64,000 bases of DNA from positions 48,546,001 to 48,610,000 of the forward strand of contig NC_043013.1 of NCBI RefSeq assembly GCF_006345805.1, read 5' to 3'. The position numbers and the translations under genes were made by a program. Origin of the DNA: Octopus sinensis (lineage: Eukaryota). The notes below the pieces were generated by a model. That model searched no databases, was not told the origin of the DNA, and was given only the letters and a program-made list of their open reading frames with translations. Position 1 is the first letter of the stretch. Each line of letters starts with the position of its first letter. Below are positions 4,863 to 37,100 of the stretch, one piece after another.

Positions 4863-5603
4863 GTCTCGGTCACTAGTCATTCCTACATTAGAATTCAAAT
4901 TATCAAAGTGTGGAACAAGCATGTTCTTTACAGTATTATCTATTTGGTGCTATGCAATTTCATTTTGGAAACAGTTTTGCAGTTCTGTATTTTGTAAAAA
5001 TCTACTAAATATATCACTAAGTTATCTTTGAATTTTCACTAAATATTTTAATTAAAAAATTGATAATATGAATTGCTTTAAATACAACGACTATATTATG
5101 TTTTTTTTTTTGTTTACAAATGGCTTGCTGAGAGATTGGATATCTTACTATAATGTCACATCTAAAAACCTGCAGCATACTTTTGATAAATCAGCAGTGA
5201 CTTAACACAATTGCTTAAGGTTGATAATTTTTGGTGTTTATTAATCGAAATTCTTTGCTTTGTTGGAGTCCAAGTCAATATTTCCCACACTTAATATCCA
5301 ATGTGATAATTTTTAATTTAAAAAAGAAAAATTCTAAAGTGGGGCGAAATGAGTAATTACTAATTTCAATAATCTCACTTCTTTAATGGCATGGTGCATA
5401 AATATGTTAGGGAGACCGTGAAGAAGCTACAAAGGATTTTTATGTTTTTAGATTTAGTTGAGTTTCATTAATTTCATATCATGTGCCCTTTTCCTCTGAT
5501 CCTCTTTCAAATGTTCAAGATATTTAAAACTTTTGCTGCGTTTCTCATCATTCTAATGTATGAAAATGGATATCGATGTGTATGAGTCTGATTTCAAATG
5601 CAA

Positions 5604-6293
5604 GGATCTTTTTGGTTCCAATGGCAGTTTTTTAACATAATTTCTAGGTAACTAAAAAATTTTAAACTTTGTATACTGGTAGAATGTGTTTATAAAACAT
5701 CTTTTCTCTTGGCTTTATTGAGAAAATTCTATGGTTTGTAAGATATTTGTTGATTTTTTCTTCAATTTCTGCAATTTCAACCAATCAATGACGTCTATTG
5801 AGGTGAAAACATTCTGTGCCGTATGAACATGTCCCTCGTTTAAGAATCAGATTGGGTTTATTTACATTTCTGGAGAAAAAAGATACCCTTCCCCCCACCC
5901 CTAACCCTAAAACAGATTGAAATGCAATAGATTGATACTAGGGTTATAATCATGGGTGACAATTTCATATGACACCGCTAGAAAAAACTGCCGTTCAAAC
6001 CGAAAAGATCCGGGTTAGGGGTGGGGAGAAGGGTGTCTTTTTTTCTTCACAAATGTAAATAAACCCAATCTGTTTCTTTTTTTTTTACCTCAATAGACGT
6101 CATTGATTGGTTGAAATTGCAGAAATTGAAGAAAACACAAACAACAAATCTCTTACAAACTATAGACTTTTCTCAATAAAGCCAAGAGAAAAAAGATGTT
6201 TTATAAACACATTCTACCAGTATACGAAGTTTAAAAGTGTTTAGTTACGTGGAAATTATTTAAAAAAAACTGCCGTTCAAACCGAAAAGATCC
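5604..6293. mobile_element. Merlin-like MITE (5604-6011) fused to an inverted partial copy (6012-6293)
   Basis: TIR GGATCTTTTCGGTTTGAACGGCAG-type at 5604, 6011 and 6293; internal CCCTAA repeats. Confidence 0.75.
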
Positions 6294-6359
6294 TACATTA
6301 TATTTAAAAATTCATTTTCTTACTAAATTGTTTAAGAAAAAGAAAAAAAAAAAGCCGCC

Positions 6360-6472
6360 TTGTCTCACACCATTAAACTCGCGCAACGCAAGCGAAGCGG
6401 GTTGTGCTGCGCATGCGCTCTGATTGCGCCTGTCTTTTGTGAGAGACCGAATCCTTCCAGCGGAGCCGCTTC
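6360..6472 (+). promoter_or_regulatory. CpG-rich TATA-less promoter with NRF1/EWG-type site
   Basis: TGCGCATGCGC at 6408-6418 in a CpG-dense island directly upstream of a GTAAGT-terminated exon. Confidence 0.65.
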
Positions 6473-6489
6473 ATGTCTCCAGTTGCTCG
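6473..6489 (+). CDS. Exon 1 (coding part, MSPVA+CG) of a 3-exon 90-aa candidate mitochondrial single-pass microprotein
   Basis: ATG at 6473 just downstream of an NRF1-type motif; donor CTCG|GTAAGT at 6489/6490; phase 2 joins exon 2 in frame. Confidence 0.6.
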
Positions 6490-7775
6490 GTAAGTTTGTT
6501 GTGGATCTTGTTTTTAGCTTTTTACCTGCGATTTTCTATTAACGTGTTATTAGCTATTGTGTACAGAGAATGCGTGTCGCATGAAATATTCATCGATTGC
6601 CATTTATTTTAAAATTCCGTCTCTCAAGAATTATCGTTGTCAACGGTTTTTATTTCCTGCTGCCAAGATTTTCGCCCGTTTTTTTTCTCTCACTTTTTGC
6701 TCTGCTGACCTTCACCTTGCCCCCGATCGTTCCGGGCACCTCTACGGCAATCAACACACATGTTATAAACTATTCAAGCTGTTGTCCATTGATTAGTGTA
6801 TTGTAAGTCAATTTTTCAGATTGTTTCCTATCTTGAATGTATTGTATCATTTCTGATGATGTCTTTTTCTTCCCCAAATTAAATCTAAAACGGAGCTGAG
6901 GTTGTTGTTTTAAGTACAGATCATGTTTTCATGTTTCTTTATAGTACATGTCCAATCAAAACTTTCTCAGCTGTGACTGTTTTGTTCCTCTTCTTAAACA
7001 ATGTATCTAATACCTATTTCTTTATTGCCCACAAAGGGGACAAACAAGGACAGGCAAAGGGATTTAGTCGATTACATCGACCCCAGTGCGTAACTGGTAC
7101 TTATTTAATCGACCCCGAAAGAATGTAAGACAAAGTCGACCTCGGCATCTAATACCACATTATATCTCTTTCCATTTTCTTAAGACAGTAGAAGCAATTC
7201 GAAATAGATTTCTGATCAAGTAACCCAACAGAAAGGGTCTTTTCGGTCTCTTGTTGGTTCCTTAGTCGACGGGGGTCGGAGTTCGATGCTTTAATATTTT
7301 TCAATTCAAACTTCGATATTACATTTTATTCCTTTTGGGCCAATAAGATTATTCTTCGTTTTTACACCGCATTATCTTCTTTTTTGTTGTTAAATCGGCG
7401 CTTATGACGAAATAGGCTTTTCGAATTATTTACCTCTATAATGGATATTTAGAAGAATCGAAGATTTTGGTCTTGAGGAAGAAGGAAACATACCCTTGCT
7501 GGTATATTTACCTTATACCTGTTGACTAACTTACTGCTTGTTCTTCTGGGTTTTGTATGTATGCATGCATGTCTCTGTATGTAAATATACATGTGGATAT
7601 ATAACTTTCGTTATTTTTCCCTCTATACCGACCTGTAATGTTTTCGAGTATACATTGTCAGGGAGACTCTGCTTAAAGTAGAAGAAATAGCCAAATTCTT
7701 TGGCTGCTATTTCTAAAAGTTCGGTGTGTGGTAAAGCAATTTTTTTGCTGAACCTTATTATATATATATATATAT

Positions 7776-7935
7776 ATGAAAGAAAAAAAGGTGTTCAGAA
7801 TGCTGGATGGTTGTAAAAATACATATTTATTTACAAATCACGTAAATAAATATATATTTTTACAACCATCCAGCATTCTGAACACCTTTTTTTCTTTCAT
7901 ATGTATTAAATCTGTACATCACCCCCAATACTTCT

Positions 7936-7940
<5 letters not shown>
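7776..7940 (+). mobile_element. Short PLE 3' end with inverted partial copy (59-bp arms)
   Basis: Arms 7776-7834 and 7842-7900, then an unpaired tail of about 38 nt similar to the end of the large PLE; (TA)n on both sides. Confidence 0.6.
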
Positions 7941-7982
<42 letters not shown>

Positions 7983-7988
<6 letters not shown>

Positions 7989-8172
7989 GGGAAACCACTA
8001 TGTGGACACCCATGTGCTAGAAATAGATCCGCTACGGTCTCACCACCAAGAAATGTTCTCAAGAAAAATTTAGCAAAACAACCAAATTTTTCTTGAGAAC
8101 ATTTCTTGGTGGTGAGACCGTAGCGGATCTATTTCTAGCATATGGGTGTCCACATAGTGGTTTCCCTCTAAT
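7983..8172. repeat. 89-bp inverted repeat, 12-nt spacer, in (TA)n (probable inverted retroelement end)
   Basis: 7983-8071 vs 8084-8172, one mismatch. Confidence 0.8.
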
Positions 8173-9145
8173 ATATATATATTATACAGTTTTTACTGAA
8201 CCTTCAGTTTTTTTTCTTATGCTAGACCACTGGTGTGAAATCGATGTTAATTAAATTAATATCTAATTAATCATCCTTATTTTGAATTTATATATATTTA
8301 TATATATCCACATGCGTCGTTTTGTTTGAATTTACCTGTAATTATTGCCAGCTTTGGTAAAAGGGTAGAGGACTTGTTGAAACCATCGATCCCAGTTCTT
8401 GACTGGCACTTTATTCTATCGAACTGTGAGAAGGGTTTGAACATTAGCCGGGACGAAAAGAGCCGGATACATATGTATTAGCGGTTAATTCAATCAACAA
8501 CATTGTCTTTCATTTTAAAAAAAGAGAACTTTGTATCCCACAAAAATATATTCGTAGGCTATATTTCAAAATTGTGTCTGTTTTCCAATGTTTTCAGTTT
8601 ATTTCCAGTAAGTTATTAATTATATTAAGGTCACAGTCTGTAATTAGCGGTCGATTTATTTAAATTAAGTTATATAATTAAATTTGTTGTCTGCTTTTTC
8701 ATGTCATATTGGAAAAACAATTCGGCTGTGGTTTTGAAATTCAAACTTATCAGGCAGAAAGTCAATAAACAGAACATTTCCCAACTCAGATCGCATTTGT
8801 ATAATTTTAAAACGCAATTGGGACTCTGTCAGTTTTTTTGGAAAGTAGCAAATTAACGAAGACGTTGTTGTCTCCCTTTGATCGCGAAAGTAAAACGAAA
8901 TTAAGATTTATTTTTTCAGTGGCTTTGTTACAGGAAGGGTATGGTACCCTTAACTTTTTTAGGGCTCCAAGACAGATTGGGAGAATTATGGTCGAAACTT
9001 GGGTCCTAAACGCGAAACGAATTCGGTTCCGGCGTTTAGGTAGAATTTTGAACCAGATAGTGGATTAAGCCTACAATCTATGCCTTCTTTATTCACTAAC
9101 TCCAACTCCAGTAAAATCTAATCTGCTAATCTAAGTAAGATATTA

Positions 9146-9552
9146 GGATCTTTTCGGTTTGAACGGCAGTTTTTAACATAATTTCTAGGTAACTGAAAAA
9201 TTTTAAACTTCGTATACTGGTAGAATGTGTTTATAAAACATCTTTTTCTCTTGGCTTTATTGAGAAAATTCTATAGTTTGTAAGATATTTGTTGTTTTTT
9301 TTCTTCTTCAATTTCTGCAATTTCAACCAATTAGTGACGTCTATTGAGGTAAAAAAACATTTTGTGCCGTATGAATATGTCCCTCGTTTAAGAAACAGAT
9401 TGGGTTTATTTACATTTGTGAAGAAAAAAGATACCCCACCCCTAACCCTAAAACAGATTGAAATGCAATAGATCGATACTAGGGTCATAATTATGGGTGA
9501 CAATTTCATACAACACTGCTAGAAAAAACTGTCATTCAAACTGAAAAGATCC
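9146..9552 (+). mobile_element. Non-autonomous DNA transposon (Merlin-like MITE)
   Basis: About 29-bp TIRs with GG..CC termini; perfect 8-bp TSD AGATATTA (9138-9145 and 9553-9560). Superfamily inferred from GG ends plus 8-bp TSD. Confidence 0.85.
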
Positions 9553-9798
9553 AGATATTATCCTACTGGGGAATTCATTACATTGAAATTATACAATATT
9601 ATCATATTGCTGCAACTTAAAGTAGGTTTTATCACTTGAATTGTTGCCGAAACAATTATGACTAATCTACAAAATTAGATTTGGATTTAAATTAGAAGGA
9701 TATTTTCCTTGTTAATCTTAAAAGATAAGTGGAATTATCAGTTATCTGGCCATAGTTGAAGGATGAAATATGCTTTTCTCTATATATATGATAAACAC

Positions 9799-9932
9799 AA
9801 CCAAATTGGATCAAAATCAGTTATTATTGTGAAATGAGCTTGTTAACCATTCTGTCATCATCATCGATGATGATGACAGAATGGTTAACAAGCTCATTTC
9901 ACAATAATAACTGATTTTGATCCAATTTGGTT
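9799..9932. repeat. Perfect 134-bp spacerless palindrome
   Basis: 67-bp arms centred on CATCATC|GATGATG at 9865/9866. Confidence 0.9.
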
Positions 9933-10275
9933 ACTGATTTTTTAACATTGCCCCTGGTTGATCCAAGCTTTGTGGGTGAAAAAGTGAGTGGATGGAAGTT
10001 ATGGTTGTGTATCAGATGGATTCAAAGCCTTGATTCTCTGGCATGCCTGTTTCTAAGGGAGTGCACTGGACGGCACTGCGCTCTCACTATTAAATGGTGC
10101 ACCCTCAGATTTACAGTGATACACTTTACCATTATTACAAATCAGTACCCACCCAGAATATTCTGAAGCAGCCCCAGGCACCAAAGTCCGGCAATAGGCC
10201 TGCTCTCTGGGATGCTCCAGCATCCTGCCTCCACTATTGTTGTCTTTCCTTATATAATGCAGAATAGTTTTGTGT

Positions 10276-10513
10276 ATACCTATTTCTTTACTACCCACAA
10301 GGGGCTAAACACAGAGGGGACAAACAAGGACAGACAAACGGATTAAGTTGATTACATCGACCCCAGTGCATAACTGGTACTTAATTTATCGACCCCGAAA
10401 GGATGAAAGGCAAAGTCGACCTCGGCGGAATTTGAACTCAGAACGTAACGGCAGACGAAATACGGCTATGCATTTCGCCCAACGTGCTAACGTTTCTGCC
10501 AGCTCACCGCCTT
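10276..10513 (-). mobile_element. SINE-B (tRNA-like head, GACTTTGCCTTTCATCCTTTCGGGGTCGAT core)
   Basis: B-box-like GAGTTCAAATTCC; conserved central domain. Confidence 0.9.
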
Positions 10514-11144
10514 ATATATATATATCATCATCATCGTTTAACATCCGCTTTCCATGCTAGCATGGGTTGGACGATTTGACTGAGGACTGGCGAACCAGAA
10601 GGCTGCACCAGGCTCTAATCTTGATCTGGCAGAGTTTCTACAGCTGGATGACCTTCCTAACGCCAACCACTCCGGGCTTCTTTCAGTTTCCATTTACCAA
10701 ATCCACTCAATGTTTTGATTTACCAGGGGCTGTAATAGATGACACTTGCCCAAAGACATTTGGGCTTGTTCTTCCATTCCCCTCTAGCTTCTCAACACTT
10801 GATATAGAACCACCATCTCTTCTTTTAACCCCCCCCCCCAGTACCATTTAGCCGAGGAGGTTTTTTTTTTGTTTTTGCTTTCTTTTACTTTTCCCTAACT
10901 TTTTCCTTCTTGATGTTCTTTTCTTGTCTTGCCTTGCAAATTATTTGCCTGCTAGTGCACAAAAAAAAGGACCCAGTACATTCTGTAAAGGGGTTCACAT
11001 TAGGAAGGGAATCCTGACATTGGAATTTGATGTTGCCTTACCTGATCCTGTTGAACCATCTCCAACTTGAGTCAACATGGAAAATGGCTGTTAAATGATG
11101 ATGATGTATCTGTGGAATGCTCAACTACTTTTACACTAATTTGT

Positions 11145-11481
11145 TTCAGCCATTAAACTGTAGCCATACTGGGGCACCACCCTGAAGAACTAATTTTCCC
11201 CTGTACTTATATTCTTTTTTCAAGCCTGGTAGTTATTCTGTTGTTCTCTTTTGCTAAGTTACACACCACTGGTTGCCAAGTGGTGGCAGGGGTCAAACAC
11301 ATACACAGACACACATGGATATATACATATAAATATTGATTTATTTCTTTTAGTTTCCATCTACCAAATCCACTCACAAGGCTTTTCTCACCCTGAGGCT
11401 ATAGTAAAAGACACTTGCCCAAGGTGCCACGCAGTGGGACTGAACTCAGAATCATGTGGTTGGGAAGCAAACTTCTTAGCA
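11145..11481 (-). mobile_element. SINE-A (CpG-decayed)
   Basis: Family match. Confidence 0.8.
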
Positions 11482-11582
11482 CACAGCCATGCCTGCACCT
11501 ATGTTCACTATTGCTCTAAATTTATTCCTCTTGTTGAAATAAATTGTTAATATTTTTTACTTTGTTTTACTGTTTCTTTTAG

Positions 11583-11694
11583 CAGTTTATCTTCAATGGC
11601 TTCTGTGTTGGGATCCACCATTATGAGGAAAAATGGCCCCATAATTTGTCGATCTTTCTCACGAACAGCTCTGCCATTATTGAAAATATCACAG
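11583..11694 (+). CDS. Exon 2 of the microprotein gene (..SLSSMASVLGSTIMRKNGPIICRSFSRTALPLLKISQ)
   Basis: Pyrimidine tract plus TTTTAG|CAG acceptor; in-frame ATG at 11596; donor CAG|GTAATT at 11694/11695; encodes an R/K/S-rich segment with no acidic residues. Confidence 0.75.
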
Positions 11695-12436
11695 GTAATT
11701 TCTTTAAATATTTCTTCATAACGTATGATTATAATTTCTTAGAGTGGTTTCATAATCCATTCACTGTCATGTGTTCAATTCTTGTGAGTGCCCTTTCTGT
11801 GCCACCTGTTACCTCTCCCCTTCCCCTGAGACACCTCTTGTGAATGCCTTATTTCATCCTTAACACCCTTTCATACTGGTCCCTTACCTTTGTTTATCAT
11901 ATATGAGAGAGAGTGGGAGGATGTATATACCATCTTTATCATCAAATGTCTGTTTTCCATGCTGGCATGGACTGGCCAGTTTGATCTGAGCTGACAAGCA
12001 GGGAAACTACAACAGGTTCCAGTTTGATTTGGCTTGGTTTCTGTGGCTTGATGCCCTCTCTAACAACAACCACTTTCCAGAGTGTACTGGGTGCTTTTTA
12101 CATGGCACCATATATATATATATATATTTTGCAGCTCTTATTGGTCCAAATCAGATATGCAATCTAAGTGGGTGTCTGGTCTAAAAAGCCATGATGGATC
12201 TAAGGTGTAAGTACAAGAGGTAGCCAGACTCTGCATATATATACATACATACATATATATATATATATATGATGGACAATGGATACGGCTTTGTATTTTC
12301 TTGTTGAACAACCTGCATACATGATTTGTTTATTGTGATAAAATGTTTATGCTGTACGTTAGCTCACTTGCTTTATCATATCAGCTTTACCTGTACTGGC
12401 TTTTAGGGTATTCTTTTTGCTCTAATGAGTATATAT

Positions 12437-12740
12437 CACTGTCACTGTGACCGACCAGGCTATCAGATGTTGCTACACATCGCTGGTCACAATGCGCTTC
12501 GCATTGTTTTAGCCTTCAAATGATGCCACCCCGCTGGCTAAGCGGGCAGGCCAACATTAGAAAGAGTGAGAGAAAGTTGTGGCGAAAGAGTACAGCGGGG
12601 ATTGCCACCAACCCTACCGGAGCCTTGTGGAGCTTTAGGTGTTTTCACTCAATAAACACCCACAACGCCCGGTCTGGGAATCAAAGCCGCAATCCTATGA
12701 CCGTGAGTCCACTGCCCTAACCAATAGGCCATTGCGCCTC
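12437..12740 (-). mobile_element. SINE-D (tRNA-like head GGAGGCGCAATGGCCCAGTGGTTAGG), tail type 1
   Basis: 15-bp TSD CTAATGAGTATATAT. Confidence 0.9.
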
Positions 12741-12815
12741 CTAATGAGTATATATATATATATATATATGTATATAATCATCATCATTGTTTAACATCTG
12801 CTTTCCATGCTGGGA

Positions 12816-13910
12816 CCGGTGTCAAACAATTTATTTCAATTTCAAACAACAACCTTCATGGTTTCCCCTTCAAAGTAACCCCCCTTGAGTCTAATGCACT
12901 TTTCCATCCTTATCTGCCATGCTTCTGAGCACTGCTGGAAGGATTCATCTGGGATGCCCCTCAGCTCCAACATTACGGCCCTCTTGATGGCCTCCATGAC
13001 TTCTTGATGATTCTCTTGAGCTTGGGGAAAAGAAAAAGTCACACAGAGCAATGTCAGGTGAATAGGGAGGTTGTTTCAGTATAGGGGTGTTCACGACCGG
13101 TGACTGCTGGATGCTCAGGGCGTTGTGAGCAGTTGCATTGTTGTGGTGAAGTAGCCACGATTTGTCCTGCCACAATTCTTCTCGTCTCTTCTTGCACACT
13201 GAGCAAAGCAAATGCCATAAGATCCCTTTGTAGACTTTGCCGATTGACCCACTCGACATTGACCTCAGTCCTGTTCACTGAAGGCCTCCTGCTCCTGGAG
13301 TCATCTTCCACCTCCTCGCACACCTTTTGAACCTCTTGTACCACTCAAAAACACGTTTGTGTGACATAGTTATTTCTTTACTACCCACAGAGGGGACAAA
13401 CAAGGACAGACAAACGGATTAAGTCGGTTATATCAACACCAGTGCGTAACTGGTACTCAATTTATCTACCCCGAAAGGATGAAAGGTAAAGTTGACCTCG
13501 GCGGAATTTGAACTCAGAACGTAATGCCAGACGAAATACGGCTATGCTTTTCGCCTGGCGTGCTAGCATTTCTGCCAGCTCGCTGCCTTGTTTGTGTGAC
13601 ATGGTGTCAACTCCATTCACTTGCTGAAGCATTTCAAGTGCTTGTGATGGAATTCTCCCCACCTGGACCATAATTTTCAGGTTTATTCATTGCTTAGTGT
13701 TCATCATTTGTTCCTCAGTGCTCAGAGCTGAATGACCTGAAAAAGAGGTGGTGTAAACAAAAGCATGTGAAAAACTATGCAGTGGTTGCAGAAGCCTAAA
13801 ATTACAGTTATATGCTCTCAAGATATCATGTCAGATGATAACACAATCTACTCATCTCTCTTTCATCCAAAGCTCATACACCCAGTCCTGTTACTTTTCA
13901 GACAGACCTC

Positions 13911-13911
<1 letters not shown>
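12816..13911 (-). mobile_element. Decayed mariner with transposase remnants, interrupted by SINE-B
   Basis: WLLHHNNATAH, PPYSPDIALCDFF, MEKCIRLKGGYFEG; TIR CGAGGTCTGTCTGAAAAGT at 13911. Confidence 0.9.
13368..13589 (-). mobile_element. SINE-B inserted in mariner
   Basis: 13-bp TSD GTTTGTGTGACAT (13355-13367 and 13590-13602). Confidence 0.95.
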
Positions 13912-13953
<42 letters not shown>

Positions 13954-13964
13954 CAACATCAATG

Positions 13965-14237
13965 GAAATTGTAGCTGTGATACCAGTGCCGGTGGCATGT
14001 AAGCGAACCATCCGAATGTGGCCGTTGCCAGCGCCGCCCAGACGGGCCTCCATGCCGTTGGCATGTAAAAAGCATCCAAATACACTCATGGAGTGGTTGG
14101 CATTAGGAAGGGCATCCAGCCATAGAAACATTGCCAGATCAGACTGGGCCTGGCGCAGCCTTCTGGCTTCCCTGACCCCAGTTGAACCGTCTAATCCATG
14201 CTAGCATGGAAAGCAGACACTAGATGATGATGATGAT
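13965..14237 (+). mobile_element. Family C
   Basis: GTTAGGAAGGGCATCCAGC...(GAT)n tail. Confidence 0.8.
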
Positions 14238-14621
14238 ATATGTGTGTGTGTGTATATATATATATATATAGACACACACACGCAGATAGATAGATCTTGA
14301 TATGAGACTATTCTAAAATTACCAGGCCGAAAAAACCAAAAAGCAGCCAACTTCAGACAGCTTGCATTGTCAGTCAATAACTGAAATCAATAAAAGAATG
14401 TGTAATGAACAGTTTTGGTTAAACACTAAAGATATGCAGTAACTTTGCACTACCTTACTTTGAAGTTATATTTTGTAATGTTATGTTCTGCAATATCAGT
14501 ATAGAAACCAGATGAATTTTAACTTCACTCCAGTTAATCTCTCACTCTTTTCTGTCAGATTTCTTGCAATTTAAAAAAAAATTCTCATGTATGGTTAAGA
14601 TGTAATACCAAATGTCAGCTG

Positions 14622-14861
14622 AGGGGCGGCGAGCTGGCAGAAACGTTGGCATGCCGGGCGAAATGCTGAGCGGTATTTCGTCTGTCGTTACGTTCTGAGT
14701 TCAAATTCCGCCGTGGTCAACTTTGCCTTTCATCCTTTCGGGGTCGATAAATTAAGTACCAGTTATGCACTGAGATCGATATAATCGACTTAATCCGTTT
14801 GTCTGTCCTTGTTTGTCCTCTCTGTGTTTAGCCCCTTGTGGGTAGTAAAGCAATAGGTATT
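14622..14861 (+). mobile_element. SINE-B
   Basis: Full-length family match. Confidence 0.9.
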
Positions 14862-15100
14862 ATGGTTTTTCAGACCCCTCCCCTATATCCCACTAAATCT
14901 TAGTCTGCTGAGCTCAGACAATCATAAATGTTAAAAGCTAAGTCTTAAGACACCTCTTCTTTGTTTAATTGACGGGCATCAATTTCTAGAAACATACGGT
15001 TCTTACTATTTTTAGAAGAGCAAATAAAACCTGACACTATTAAACTATACAACTTTATTTAGGTGTCATATTTATTTGGGTATGTGGGTATTTTGAAAGT

Positions 15101-15281
15101 ACCTCAGTCCTGTTCACTGAAGGCCTCCTGCTCCTGGAGTCATGTTCCACCTCCTCGCACACCTTTTGAACCTCTTGTACTACTCAAAAACACGTTTGTG
15201 TGACATGGTGTCAACTCCATACACTCGCTGAAGCATATCAAGTGCTTGTGATGGAATTCTCCCCACCTGGACCATAATTTT
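15101..15281 (-). mobile_element. mariner fragment duplicating 13262-13677 without the SINE
   Basis: Near-identical sequence with a single GTTTGTGTGACAT (empty site). Confidence 0.85.
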
Positions 15282-15517
15282 GCAAGGGATAGATCCTGTT
15301 CAGCCACCCTGTCAGGATACAGTGAAGTCGTGAGACTGCAGCCTCCTGGTGGATTGTGAAGAGGTCGTGGAAGAGCTCAAATGAACCATTGATGCTGAGT
15401 GGAGAATCTCAGAGGATCAATGGTCAGGATCTCCAAGCTCTATCAAGAAAGTAACTGCAATGCATCCATAGGGGTGGTGGCCATGGTCGTGTAATCAACT
15501 AATGAAAGATTCACTAT

Positions 15518-15914
15518 ACTCTTTACTCTTTTACTTGTTTCAGTCATTTGACTGCAGCCATGCTGGAGCACCGCCTTTAGTCGAGCAAATCGACTTATTC
15601 TTTGTAAGCCCTGTACTTATTCTATTGGTCTCTTTTTGCTGAACCGCTAAGTGACGGGGACGTAAACACACCAGCATCAGTTGTCAAGCAATGCTAGGGG
15701 GACAAACACAAAACACAAACACACAAACACACACACACATACATATATATGAAAGGCTTCTTTCAGTTTCTGTCTACCAAATCCACTCACAAGGCATTGA
15801 TCGGCCCGGGGCTATAGCAGAAGACACTTACCCAAGATGCCAGGCAGTGGGACTGAACCCCGGAACCATGTGGTTGGTTAGCAAGCTACTTACCACACAG
15901 CCACTCCCACGCTT
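15518..15914 (-). mobile_element. SINE-A
   Basis: Full-length family match. Confidence 0.9.
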
Positions 15915-16097
15915 ATGACTCAAGATCCCAATTCAAATTTATAATAATGGAATTGCATGGCAACAGATAGTCTGAGAATCTGGGAAAGCAGATTTTGTTT
16001 GTTTGTCGTTAGACATTTAATTGTTCTAATTTATATACTGACAATATTAATGAACTAAATTGAGATTATTAAAAAAAATGTTATTCTTTATTTGCAG

Positions 16098-16241
16098 GCA
16101 GAGGGTTCGTCGAGCAGCAGTAAAGTCGATCAGTTCATCTTACCAGTTGCTGTTTTCTTGTCACTGTTTGGTTTTAGTGTCTCACTGTTCAGCACCAGGC
16201 AACTCTATGATAATTCTTCCAGATCACCCTTCAAGAGATAA
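16098..16241 (+). CDS. Exon 3 of the microprotein gene (AEGSSSSSKVDQFILPVAVFLSLFGFSVSLFSTRQLYDNSSRSPFKR*)
   Basis: Acceptor TTCTTTATTTGCAG|G; phase 0 matches exon 2; about 21-aa hydrophobic segment; TAA at 16239-16241; total CDS 17+112+144=273 nt. Confidence 0.75.
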   Translation, partial: AEGSSSSSKVDQFILPVAVFLSLFGFSVSLFSTRQLYDNSSRSPFKR

Positions 16242-16414
16242 TGATCTTCACACATTAGGGTTGATAAAATACGAACTTATTATCAAACTCGACATGTAAG
16301 ATAAACGTGAACTTATCAAACTCCAAAGAAATATACTCAATATATTTATAAAACATACAACTATTTTGTGAAAGAAAAACAAATTTTATTCTCAATGTTG
16401 TAGTTGTATTTATT

Positions 16415-16420
16415 AATAAA
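16415..16420 (+). terminator. Polyadenylation signal of the microprotein gene
   Basis: AATAAA about 175 nt after the stop codon, followed by a GT/T-rich stretch near 16440. Confidence 0.55.
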
Positions 16421-16907
16421 AAGCTGCAAAACACGCTAAGTGTTTTTAATCTCTTTCAAGGTTTTAATCCCGACACTTGGTAAATCTTTTGTTTCTATGG
16501 AACCCAGTGACGTGTAATGAAAGTCGCTCTCAGCAACTGCATTTAAACTGGCCACATCTGGGCCCAAATATTCTACTTGCTTTATGTTCACATTGATCAG
16601 AACCAGCCTCCTACACCTACCCTACAATATCATTCTAAGAAATCACTTCATCAAAATCTCAAAGCTATGAGATGATGCATAATAAATTCAAAGCAATGTC
16701 AATTAATAAACATTATATTCGACAGAATAATCTGAACGCTACAGGGTTAATTTGGTAAACCATCATTGAATATCTTTGCTTTACTCTAGCCTTACTTGCT
16801 CATAGCATAATGACAAGATATATATTTAGTCTTCTGCTAAGATACTGCTCTCCTTGCAACACTTTTGAGGATTTATGAACATGCATTAAAACTATCATAA
16901 CTGATTG

Positions 16908-19334: not shown

Positions 19335-19416
<82 letters not shown>

Positions 19417-19598
19417 TATATATATATATATATATTATATATACTTATATTATATATATATATATAACTTATATATATATATATATAACTTATATATATA
19501 CTTATATATATACTTATATATATATATATATATATATATATACTTATATATATATATATATATATATATACTTATATATATATATATATATATATACT

Positions 19599-19630
<32 letters not shown>

Positions 19631-19667
19631 ATATATATACTTATATATATATATATATATATATACT

Positions 19668-19700
<33 letters not shown>

Positions 19701-19806
19701 CTTATATATTATATATATATATATACTTATATATATATATATATATATTATATATACTTATATATATTATATATATTATATATACTTATATATATATATA
19801 TATATA

Positions 19807-19847
<41 letters not shown>

Positions 19848-19908
19848 TTATATATATATATATATATATACTTATATATATATATATATACTTATATATA
19901 TATATATA

Positions 19909-19954
<46 letters not shown>

Positions 19955-19958
19955 TATA

Positions 19959-19991
<33 letters not shown>

Positions 19992-20003
19992 TTATATATA
20001 TAT

Positions 20004-20039
<36 letters not shown>

Positions 20040-36699: not shown

Positions 36700-37100
36700 G
36701 AGCGTCTGTGAGGTGTGTGTTGTGTTTGTAGTGATATTATAACGCGCGCTCGCGCACCGCCCATTTGTATTTAACGCGTGTTGGTGCCTTTACCAAGGCA
36801 CAGAAAGGAAGGCCCCTCTCGCGCATGCGCGAACCACCGGTAGCACGACCCTATTGCCTACGTAGCAGTTAGCGAGGCAAGGGGGTCGTAGAACGTTTGA
36901 CCGCTAGCAGCAGCAGCCAATGACTTGGGACCCAGCGATTGACGGCGACGGTCACGCATATATTCTCTCCGTCAGGATTAGATTCTAGCAGTCCTTTAGC
37001 CGAAGACTTTTAACCAAAATTGTTGCAGACCAACATCGTCTCCATTGTTCGACGCCATCTTGGACCCTTTCTGTTTTCATCGGCTGGACATTGTAAATAT
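36700..37100. promoter_or_regulatory. CpG-island-like promoter (NRF1, NF-Y and YY1-type motifs), orientation unresolved
   Basis: CGCGCATGCGCG at 36820-36831, AGCCAATGA around 36917, CGCCATCTT (AAGATGGCG on minus) at 37053-37061. Confidence 0.6.

What the first reader, a model, noticed from the sequence alone, without database searches (positions are those of the whole stretch)
6473..16420. Hidden 3-exon gene for a 90-aa candidate mitochondrial inner-membrane microprotein
Splicing 6473-6489, 11583-11694 and 16098-16241 at canonical sites gives MSPVARSLSSMASVLGSTIMRKNGPIICRSFSRTALPLLKISQAEGSSSSSKVDQFILPVAVFLSLFGFSVSLFSTRQLYDNSSRSPFKR. The first 43 aa have 4 R, 2 K, no D/E and an RSFS motif (presequence-like), followed by one TM helix (about 56-76) and a short basic tail. 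An NRF1-type promoter motif and an AATAAA fit a nuclear-encoded mitochondrial gene. The D-x9-L-x3-G spacing of the TM matches COX7A-type subunits as recalled, but the usual KQxxFQ..LKGG motif is absent, so it may be a divergent COX7A-like or lineage-specific subunit (inference). It is invisible to six-frame ORF calling.
Basis: partly seen in the sequence, partly recalled or inferred. Interest (0 to 1): 0.8.

Follow-up and report, generated by a model that had tools for sequence, protein, structure and literature searches.

The report
Conserved octopus single-pass membrane microprotein gene
The three short exons form a real, expressed gene under purifying selection for an 89/90-residue single-pass membrane protein, but it is already annotated as "uncharacterized" in two sister octopus species, it may be mitochondrial (untested), and it is not demonstrably COX7A-like.

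Summary
Exons 6473-6489, 11583-11694 and 16098-16241 join in frame at GT..AG sites and give the quoted 90-aa protein.

The gene is real:
- The exon 2/exon 3 junction is present in contigs of four runs from four studies.
- Exon 3 is single-copy in the 2.72-Gb assembly, so the spliced contigs are most simply read as RNA-derived.
- Against Octopus bimaculoides, 13 of 17 coding differences are synonymous (dN/dS 0.086). The other two frames show no such bias.

It is not "hidden". The same gene is annotated as O. bimaculoides LOC106875771 (isoforms X1 and X2) and as O. vulgaris CAI9734966.1 (89 aa). The 89- and 90-aa forms differ by a TAG|CAG tandem acceptor.

A 49%-identical homologue occurs in transcript contigs of two closely related organisms that I could not identify.

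Function is unknown. Pfam, NCBIfam and PDB sequence searches are blank. The COX7A idea fails every sequence test, and a better COX7A-like exon lies elsewhere in the genome.

In both lineages the N-terminus has no acidic residue for 34-44 residues and ends in a conserved R-x-F|S-R-T-A-L-P motif. The TM helix is highly conserved. This fits an imported mitochondrial membrane protein (about 0.5). A tail-anchored protein is the main rival.

Language-model features point to a family that includes vertebrate ZNF593OS. That is an untested lead.

The parts
6409..6418 (.). Palindromic NRF1-type motif GCGCATGCGC in the promoter/5' region. Its internal ATG (6413) is in frame with the CDS but is closed by TGA at 6440-6442.
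   Evidence: The motif is identical in O. vulgaris and O. bimaculoides, while the flanks carry indels.
6473..6489 (+). Coding part of exon 1 (MSPVA + 2 nt), followed by donor gtaagt. The 5' UTR extends upstream for an unknown distance.
   Evidence: The ATG and donor are conserved in three Octopus species, with one synonymous and one R>H change. The sister-species gene models start with MSPVA.
6490..11582 (+). Intron 1 (GT..AG), rich in repeats.
11583..11694 (+). Exon 2, the presequence-like region up to ...LKISQ. The tandem acceptor TAG|CAG| (11583 or 11586) gives the 90- or 89-aa form.
   Evidence: Contig pieces start at 11582/11583 and end at the junction. The O. vulgaris model lacks Ser7. 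O. bimaculoides X1/X2 differ by that Ser.
11695..16097 (+). Intron 2 (GT..AG), full of highly represented repeats.
   Evidence: joint 11691->16095, 'cut +3', GT..AG, in X1, X5, X7 and X15.
16098..16241 (+). Exon 3 coding part: Ser-rich linker, TM helix (residues ~56-76), basic tail, TAA.
   Evidence: Single copy in the genome. AlphaFold predicts one helix over residues 8-40 of this piece.
16242..16434 (+). 3' UTR with AATAAA at 16415-16420. Contig ends lie at 16424-16434.
   Evidence: 92% identical to O. bimaculoides, against 84-91% for introns.

Best explanation
This is the window species' orthologue of an annotated but uncharacterized cephalopod gene (O. bimaculoides LOC106875771; O. vulgaris CAI9734966.1). 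It has three exons and is spliced and polyadenylated. It encodes an 89/90-aa protein, the two forms arising from a NAGNAG acceptor. Shown here: transcription and splicing of exons 2-3, single-copy status, purifying selection on this reading frame, and conservation of a 79-80-aa core in a distant relative. Inferred: the first ~31 residues act as a mitochondrial matrix-targeting presequence. They are basic and hydroxylated, contain no acidic residue, and vary in sequence while keeping their composition. The presequence would be cut by the processing peptidase after the conserved Arg-x-Phe (R29-S-F|S-R-T-A-L-P, an R-3 type site). That leaves a ~59-aa protein with one TM helix in a mitochondrial membrane, probably the inner one. 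The helix has a strongly conserved face of small residues (FG-x-SVSLFST), which would pack against a partner as a small accessory subunit or assembly factor. Orientation and partner are unknown.
For: Gene reality:
- The 11694|16098 junction is in one contig in each of 4 runs from 4 studies. The contigs end 4-14 nt after AATAAA.
- Exon 3 occurs once in the 2.72-Gb assembly, so no retrocopy in this assembly explains the spliced contigs.
- Against O. bimaculoides there are 17 differences in 273 nt, 12 of them at third codon positions: 13 synonymous and 4 non-synonymous, dN/dS 0.086, binomial P = 9e-6. Counted as changed codons, the ratio of synonymous to non-synonymous is 12:4 in this frame and 3:13 in each of the other two.
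- The second homologue pair, L002/L004, has dN/dS 0.065.

Orthologues: P0001, P0005 and P0006 are 96-100% identical and syntenic, with the same splice sites.

Targeting inference:
- The first acidic residue is at position 45 in octopus and 35 in the distant homologue, each preceded by 6 basic residues.
- R-x-F|S is conserved in both.
- The N-terminal 20 residues are not conserved in sequence, whereas FSRTALP and the TM are invariant.
- There is no N-terminal hydrophobic core, so it is not a signal peptide.
Against: - No localisation data of any kind.
- No mitochondrial-targeting predictor was available.
- No family assignment: Pfam, NCBIfam and PDB sequence searches are all blank.
- The TM lies 14 residues from the C-terminus, which also fits a tail-anchored protein.
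- The flank charges (N side -1, C side +3) do not fit a simple matrix-N/IMS-C stop-transfer topology under the positive-inside rule.
- The most conserved N-terminal stretch (FSRTALP-L--SQ) is better conserved than presequences usually are. It may belong to the mature protein or do something else.
- The start codon is uncertain. Met1 is known only from Octopus, and only Met11 aligns with the Met of the distant homologue.
- NRF1-type motifs occur at many housekeeping promoters.
Confidence: 0.5

Rival explanations
1. It is a tail-anchored membrane protein of the ER or the mitochondrial outer membrane. The C-terminal TM is inserted post-translationally. The basic, Ser-rich N-terminal 55 residues face the cytosol, and the conserved FSRTALP motif is a binding or regulatory site.
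For: There is a single TM at residues 56-76 of 90, with only 14 residues after it. The C-terminal flank has net charge +3, typical of outer-membrane tail anchors (general knowledge of TA proteins). The N-terminal region is predicted disordered. FSRTALP is unusually well conserved for a presequence.
Against: In two lineages that share only 49% identity, acidic residues are completely absent over 34-44 N-terminal residues and there are 6 basic residues. Together with a conserved R-x-F|S site, this is the signature of a cleavable presequence. The TM sequence is more conserved than tail anchors that serve only for anchoring usually are.
Confidence: 0.25
2. It is a very divergent COX7A-type subunit of cytochrome c oxidase.
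For: The architecture is the same: presequence, short matrix segment, one TM. The D-x9-L-x3-G spacing is present in the sequence. Atlas language-model features list COX7a clusters, but only at 0.79-0.83, as the 4th listed set or lower, below the tool's own 0.9 threshold.
Against: There is no PF02238 hit at E<=10 for the exon peptides or for the orthologues P0001:24-112 and P0002:56-134. A profile of the family finds no PDB chain at E<=10, although COX7A chains are abundant there. hhalign against the genome's own COX7A-like exon gives probability 0.3%. The KQxxFQ and LKGG motifs are absent. A separate exon on contig C6 (L006:1501-1626) does match PF02238 above its cut-off in bit score (25.4 against 22.1; genome-wide E 0.06), and its best seven PDB hits are all COX7A1.
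Confidence: 0.06
3. It is a non-coding transcript, and the 90-codon frame is fortuitous.
For: The ORF is short, no known domain is found, and no peptide or ribosome data were available.
Against: The synonymous bias is specific to this frame (12:4 against 3:13 and 3:13), P = 9e-6, dN/dS 0.086 and 0.065 in two independent species pairs. The frame stays open with 49% identity in a distant relative whose dS is about 1.
Confidence: 0.02

Closest known systems
Octopus bimaculoides LOC106875771 (XP_014779518.1 / XP_014779519.1, 'uncharacterized protein') and Octopus vulgaris CAI9734966.1 ('Hypothetical predicted protein', 89 aa)
   Same: Same gene. They are 96-100% identical over 89-90 aa, with the same three exons, the same donor and tandem acceptor, syntenic introns and the same GCGCATGCGC motif.
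   Different: The RefSeq O. bimaculoides models start 23 codons further upstream, at the ATG inside the NRF1 motif. In the window that frame is closed by TGA at 6440, and the 5' region carries indels. The extension is therefore not conserved and is probably not translated (and my reading). The window product with Ser7 corresponds to isoform X1. The O. vulgaris model corresponds to X2.
Cytochrome c oxidase subunit 7A (Pfam PF02238)
   Same: Small nuclear-encoded protein with a presequence-like N-terminus and one TM helix. An Asp precedes the TM and a Gly lies inside it at similar spacing.
   Different: No detectable sequence or profile similarity. It lacks KQxxFQ and LKGG. The genome holds a better COX7A-like exon elsewhere.
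'ZNF593 opposite strand' (ZNF593OS) family of chordates, plus an unnamed 79-aa arthropod cluster (ESM Atlas clusters)
   Same: These are the nearest clusters by language-model features for three queries: exon 3 alone, full-length octopus, and the 49%-identical homologue. Scores are 0.87-0.92 (arthropod cluster) and 0.88-0.89 (ZNF593OS), with 190-213 of 256 features shared. The proteins are of similar length (63-79 aa).
   Different: No alignment or E-value exists. HMMER and word searches did not reach them. I could not fetch their sequences. Only one paper in the library mentions ZNF593OS, in a biomarker study, so the link gives no function even if true.

Membership tests
Cephalopod LOC106875771 / CAI9734966.1 uncharacterized-protein family | Full-length sequence identity with annotated members | tested here: met
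   Exon 3 matches P0001 at E 5e-20 with 96% identity. P0005 equals the window product minus Ser7.
Cephalopod LOC106875771 / CAI9734966.1 uncharacterized-protein family | Same exon-intron structure and synteny | tested here: met
   The window is colinear with L013 and L014. The splice sites are identical.
COX7A (PF02238) | Match to the family HMM | tested here: not met
   No Pfam family at E<=10 for the exon 2 and exon 3 peptides, P0001:24-112 or P0002:56-134. The locus is absent from the genome-wide PF02238 hits.
COX7A (PF02238) | Conserved KQxxFQ and (L)KGG motifs before the TM | tested here: not met
   Read from the sequence...LKISQAEGSSSSSKVDQF.... Both motifs are also absent in the distant homologue.
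COX7A (PF02238) | Similarity to solved COX7A chains or to the genome's own COX7A | tested here: not met
   The A1 profile against PDB finds 0 hits at E<=10. hhalign of A1 against L006:1498-1641 gives probability 0.3%.
COX7A (PF02238) | Association with complex IV | not testable with these tools
   Needs complexome profiling or a structure.
MPP-cleaved mitochondrial presequence proteins | N-terminus basic and hydroxylated, without acidic residues, with an R-2/R-3 cleavage motif | tested here: met
   There are 0 D/E before residue 45 (octopus) or 35 (homologue), with 6 R/K in each. R-x-F|S is conserved. The maximum 11-residue helical hydrophobic moment is 0.63 and 0.52. These figures are descriptive only, with no trained predictor.
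MPP-cleaved mitochondrial presequence proteins | Actual import and cleavage | not testable with these tools
   Needs import assays, localisation or N-terminomics.
Tail-anchored proteins | Single TM within about 30 residues of the C-terminus and no N-terminal targeting signal | tested here: inconclusive
   The TM at 56-76 of 90 meets the first part. The presequence-like N-terminus argues against the second.
ZNF593OS family | Alignable sequence homology | tested here: inconclusive
   Only Atlas feature scores of 0.88-0.89. HMMER and word searches did not find members. Their sequences could not be fetched for alignment.

The most novel reading that the evidence does not exclude
The cephalopod protein, the unnamed 79-aa arthropod cluster and the vertebrate ZNF593OS family are one ancient, metazoan-wide microprotein family that has never been characterized. 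It would be a presequence-bearing single-pass mitochondrial membrane protein, for example an unrecognised accessory subunit or assembly factor of a respiratory or transport complex.
Probability: 0.2. Interest if true: 0.6.

Novelty: new member of a known kind. Interest (0 to 1): 0.3.

Why it matters
The finding shows that a tiny three-exon gene, invisible to ORF lists, is genuine and under constraint. Its existence is not new, because genome annotation pipelines already model it in sister species. What remains open is its function. It belongs to a conserved single-pass membrane protein family with no Pfam or PDB relatives. If it is mitochondrial and related to vertebrate ZNF593OS, it would be an uncharacterized conserved component of animal mitochondria. 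That would be of moderate interest and easy to test.

Tried and rejected
- Word-index protein search with exon 3 (stop-free 60-aa reference, region 14-60): no candidate. The profile of A1 found only the same proteins.
- Pfam, NCBIfam and PDB sequence searches with the exon peptides, the orthologues and the profile: all blank.
- Genome-wide PF02238 scan: noisy, best E 0.06, and our locus is not listed. Word search with the COX7A-like exon L006 to build a COX7A alignment found nothing, so only a profile-against-single-sequence hhalign could be run.
- AlphaFold. Exon 3 alone gives one helix (pLDDT 77). Full length with the 4-sequence alignment gives pLDDT 51. That is too poor for a fold search, so none was run.
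- Literature: ZNF593OS occurs in one unrelated paper. LOC106875771 and the three run accessions are not found.
- The search of earlier findings near the window returned nothing.
- The species of the Logan contigs L002-L004 could not be identified.
- The spliced 90-aa string has no single reference, so I did not type it into any tool. I used the exon references and the identical orthologue P0005 instead.
- Signal peptide rejected: no N-terminal hydrophobic core (maximum 19-residue Kyte-Doolittle 0.84 in the first 40 residues).
- The upstream extension of the O. bimaculoides RefSeq model is rejected as not conserved (TGA at 6440 in the window; indels).
Full report
**Observation**

Joined, they give 273 nt, that is 90 codons plus TAA, and exactly the quoted peptide.

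- All introns are GT..AG. Exon 1 has a gtaagt donor, and long pyrimidine tracts precede both acceptors.
- GCGCATGCGC lies at 6409-6418. With up to one mismatch the window holds 4 matches against 0.26 expected from shuffles.
- AATAAA lies at 16415-16420.
- The hydrophobic maximum is at residues 56-74 (Kyte-Doolittle 2.3). The N-terminus has no hydrophobic core.

**Is it transcribed and spliced?**

Twenty public runs from nine studies hold exon 3 plus the 3' UTR. Their contig sets are 8-116 Mb, with one run of 1,036 Mb, against a 2.72-Gb genome. The tool only guesses that they are RNA.

I laid four runs from four studies on window:11400-16450. Each has one contig that skips 11695-16097. The tool reports this as 11691->16095, 'cut +3', GT..AG. 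The contigs cover exon 2 and exon 3 with no differences in the coding part and end at 16424-16434, just after AATAAA.

Exon 3 occurs once in the assembly. There is therefore no intronless copy in this assembly, and the spliced contigs are most simply read as RNA-derived.

The pieces stop exactly at 11582/11583. The contigs carry further letters upstream that do not lie on the adjacent intron: 17 in X15 and 252 in X5. For X1 the figure is about 353, which is inferred by assuming its contig contains all of exon 2, whose piece was not listed. The acceptor at 11583 is therefore used.

I could not read those upstream letters. The exon 1/exon 2 junction is not shown directly here.

**Relatives**

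The exhaustive HMMER search with exon 3 found four proteins.

- P0001 (96% identical) is O. bimaculoides XP_014779519.1, 'uncharacterized protein LOC106875771 isoform X2'.
- Its cluster also holds isoform X1 (P0006) and O. vulgaris CAI9734966.1, 'Hypothetical predicted protein', 89 aa (P0005).
- P0005 is identical to the window product except that it lacks Ser7. X1 and X2 differ by the same Ser.
- This is the tandem acceptor TAG|CAG| at 11580-11585, which is conserved in all three species.

The window most likely comes from a close relative of O. vulgaris. The three 3' UTR differences of 'organism C' are exactly those of the O. vulgaris locus L014.

P0002 and P0003 are ORFs on Logan transcript contigs from three other runs.

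- Their last 79 residues are 49% identical to the octopus protein.
- The N-terminal ~20 residues differ in sequence but are again basic and free of acidic residues.
- R-(S/F)-F-S-R-T-A-L-P-x-L-x-x-S-Q, most of the TM helix (notably F-I-L-P at its start and S-V-S-L-F-S-T at its end) and parts of the tail are conserved.
- L002 and L003 retain the end of intron 1 (pyrimidine tract, then tag|GTTGTTC).

I could not identify the source organisms. Judging by L002 versus L004, they are two closely related species or strains.

**Selection**

| Comparison | Result |
|---|---|
| Window vs O. bimaculoides, coding differences | 17 in 273 nt, 12 at third codon positions |
| Nei-Gojobori | 13 synonymous, 4 non-synonymous; dS 0.23, dN 0.02, dN/dS 0.086 |
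| Binomial test | P = 9e-6 |
| Changed codons, this frame (synonymous:non-synonymous) | 12:4 |
| Changed codons, the other two frames | 3:13 each, and both contain stops |
| L002 vs L004 | dN/dS 0.065 |
| Octopus vs L002 | dN/dS 0.41, with dS about 1 (saturated) |

The ORF is translated and constrained.

**Start codon and promoter**

The RefSeq O. bimaculoides models start 23 codons upstream, at the ATG inside GCGCATGCGC. In the window that frame ends at TGA 6440, and the 5' regions differ by indels. The extension is therefore not conserved.

Met1 (MSPVA...) is conserved in three Octopus species. Only Met11 aligns with the Met of the distant homologue. Either Met gives a presequence-like N-terminus.

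The NRF1-type motif is identical in the three octopuses, although the surrounding 146 bp are only 79% identical.

**Family**

Pfam, NCBIfam and PDB sequence searches are blank for the exon peptides, the full-length orthologues and the family profile.

COX7A was tested specifically.

- There is no PF02238 hit, and the KQxxFQ and LKGG motifs are absent.
- hhalign against the genome's own COX7A-like exon gives probability 0.3%.
- That exon is at G000:C6:88895710-88895835 and reads DDGLLVWQKRGTRDRFMYYFSLALMASGG.... It matches PF02238 at 25.4 bits, above the 22.1-bit cut-off, though the genome-wide E-value is only 0.06. Its seven best PDB hits are all COX7A1, at E 0.2-0.7.

I therefore do not file the protein under COX7A.

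ESM-Atlas features give the same four listed cluster sets for three different queries:

- an unnamed 79-aa arthropod cluster (0.87-0.92);
- the 'ZNF593 opposite strand' family of chordates (0.88-0.89);
- a 63-aa chordate cluster (0.84-0.87);
- COX7a clusters, listed last (0.79-0.83).

The two full-length queries list them in that order. With exon 3 alone, ZNF593OS comes first. This is one kind of evidence, without any alignment. I treat it as a lead. The literature on ZNF593OS is essentially empty.

**Mechanism (inference)**

In both lineages the N-terminus has no acidic residue for 34-44 residues and six basic ones. It is followed by a conserved R-x-F|S site of the R-3 type.

The N-terminal sequence is variable while its composition is kept. 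That is what presequences look like (established knowledge of mitochondrial import).

The TM has a conserved face of small residues, which suggests packing against another helix.

I therefore favour an imported, processed, single-pass mitochondrial membrane protein of about 59 residues, at a probability of about 0.5.

The main rival is a tail-anchored protein, at about 0.25. The TM ends 14 residues from the C-terminus, and the C-flank has charge +3. The flank charges (-1 on the N side, +3 on the C side) also leave the orientation open.

**Verdict**

This is a correct and careful observation of a real gene, but the gene is already annotated as uncharacterized elsewhere. The mitochondrial reading is plausible and untested. 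The COX7A link is not supported.

Noticed in passing
window 5603-6294: A ~690-bp near-palindrome (arms 82-94% complementary) lies 115 bp upstream of the NRF1 motif. It is built from a ~410-bp repeat with thousands of candidate copies in the genome (4836 first-look candidates, copies 92-95% identical). It is present at this site in O. vulgaris, but no inverted repeat is found at the matching place in O. bimaculoides. This looks like a young MITE- or foldback-like insertion next to a promoter.
   Followed up: partly
L004:91-426 (Logan contig of SRR25158130); G000:C17:43892896-43893156 and G000:C17:44066921-44067013 (both minus strand): In one transcript contig of the distant homologue, a 112-codon open upstream exon is joined in frame exactly at the exon 2 acceptor. 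That upstream part is 73% identical to exons of a different gene, which in this genome lies 4.6 Mb away on the same chromosome and on the opposite strand. It could be a conjoined or read-through transcript, an alternative 5' exon, or an assembly chimera.
   Followed up: partly
window 36700-37100: A second exact GCGCATGCGC (36821-36830) sits in a CpG-rich, promoter-like stretch with a CCAAT box (about 36918) and a YY1-like GCCATCTTG (about 37056). This is probably the promoter of another gene in the window.
   Followed up: no
window 11400-15960 (introns): Intron 2 and the end of intron 1 hold several short repeats whose summed contig depth in the laid runs is 100 to 1000 times that of the gene's exons. 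Many chimeric joints occur among them. They look like highly transcribed SINE-like elements.
   Followed up: no
window 6413-6442: The ATG inside the NRF1 palindrome opens a 9-codon frame closed by TGA 6440. In O. bimaculoides the same ATG is annotated as the start codon of LOC106875771. If transcription starts upstream of the motif, this would be a short upstream ORF in the window species.
   Followed up: partly
G000:C6:88895710-88895835 (L006:1501-1626): A probable exon of the canonical COX7A gene of this genome. It scores PF02238 25.4 bits (genome-wide E 0.06), and its seven best PDB hits are all COX7A1 at E 0.2-0.7.
   Followed up: partly
window 19361-20015: A long imperfect (TA/TATATA-C)n-type microsatellite that reads as YIYIYI in ORF lists.
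   Followed up: no
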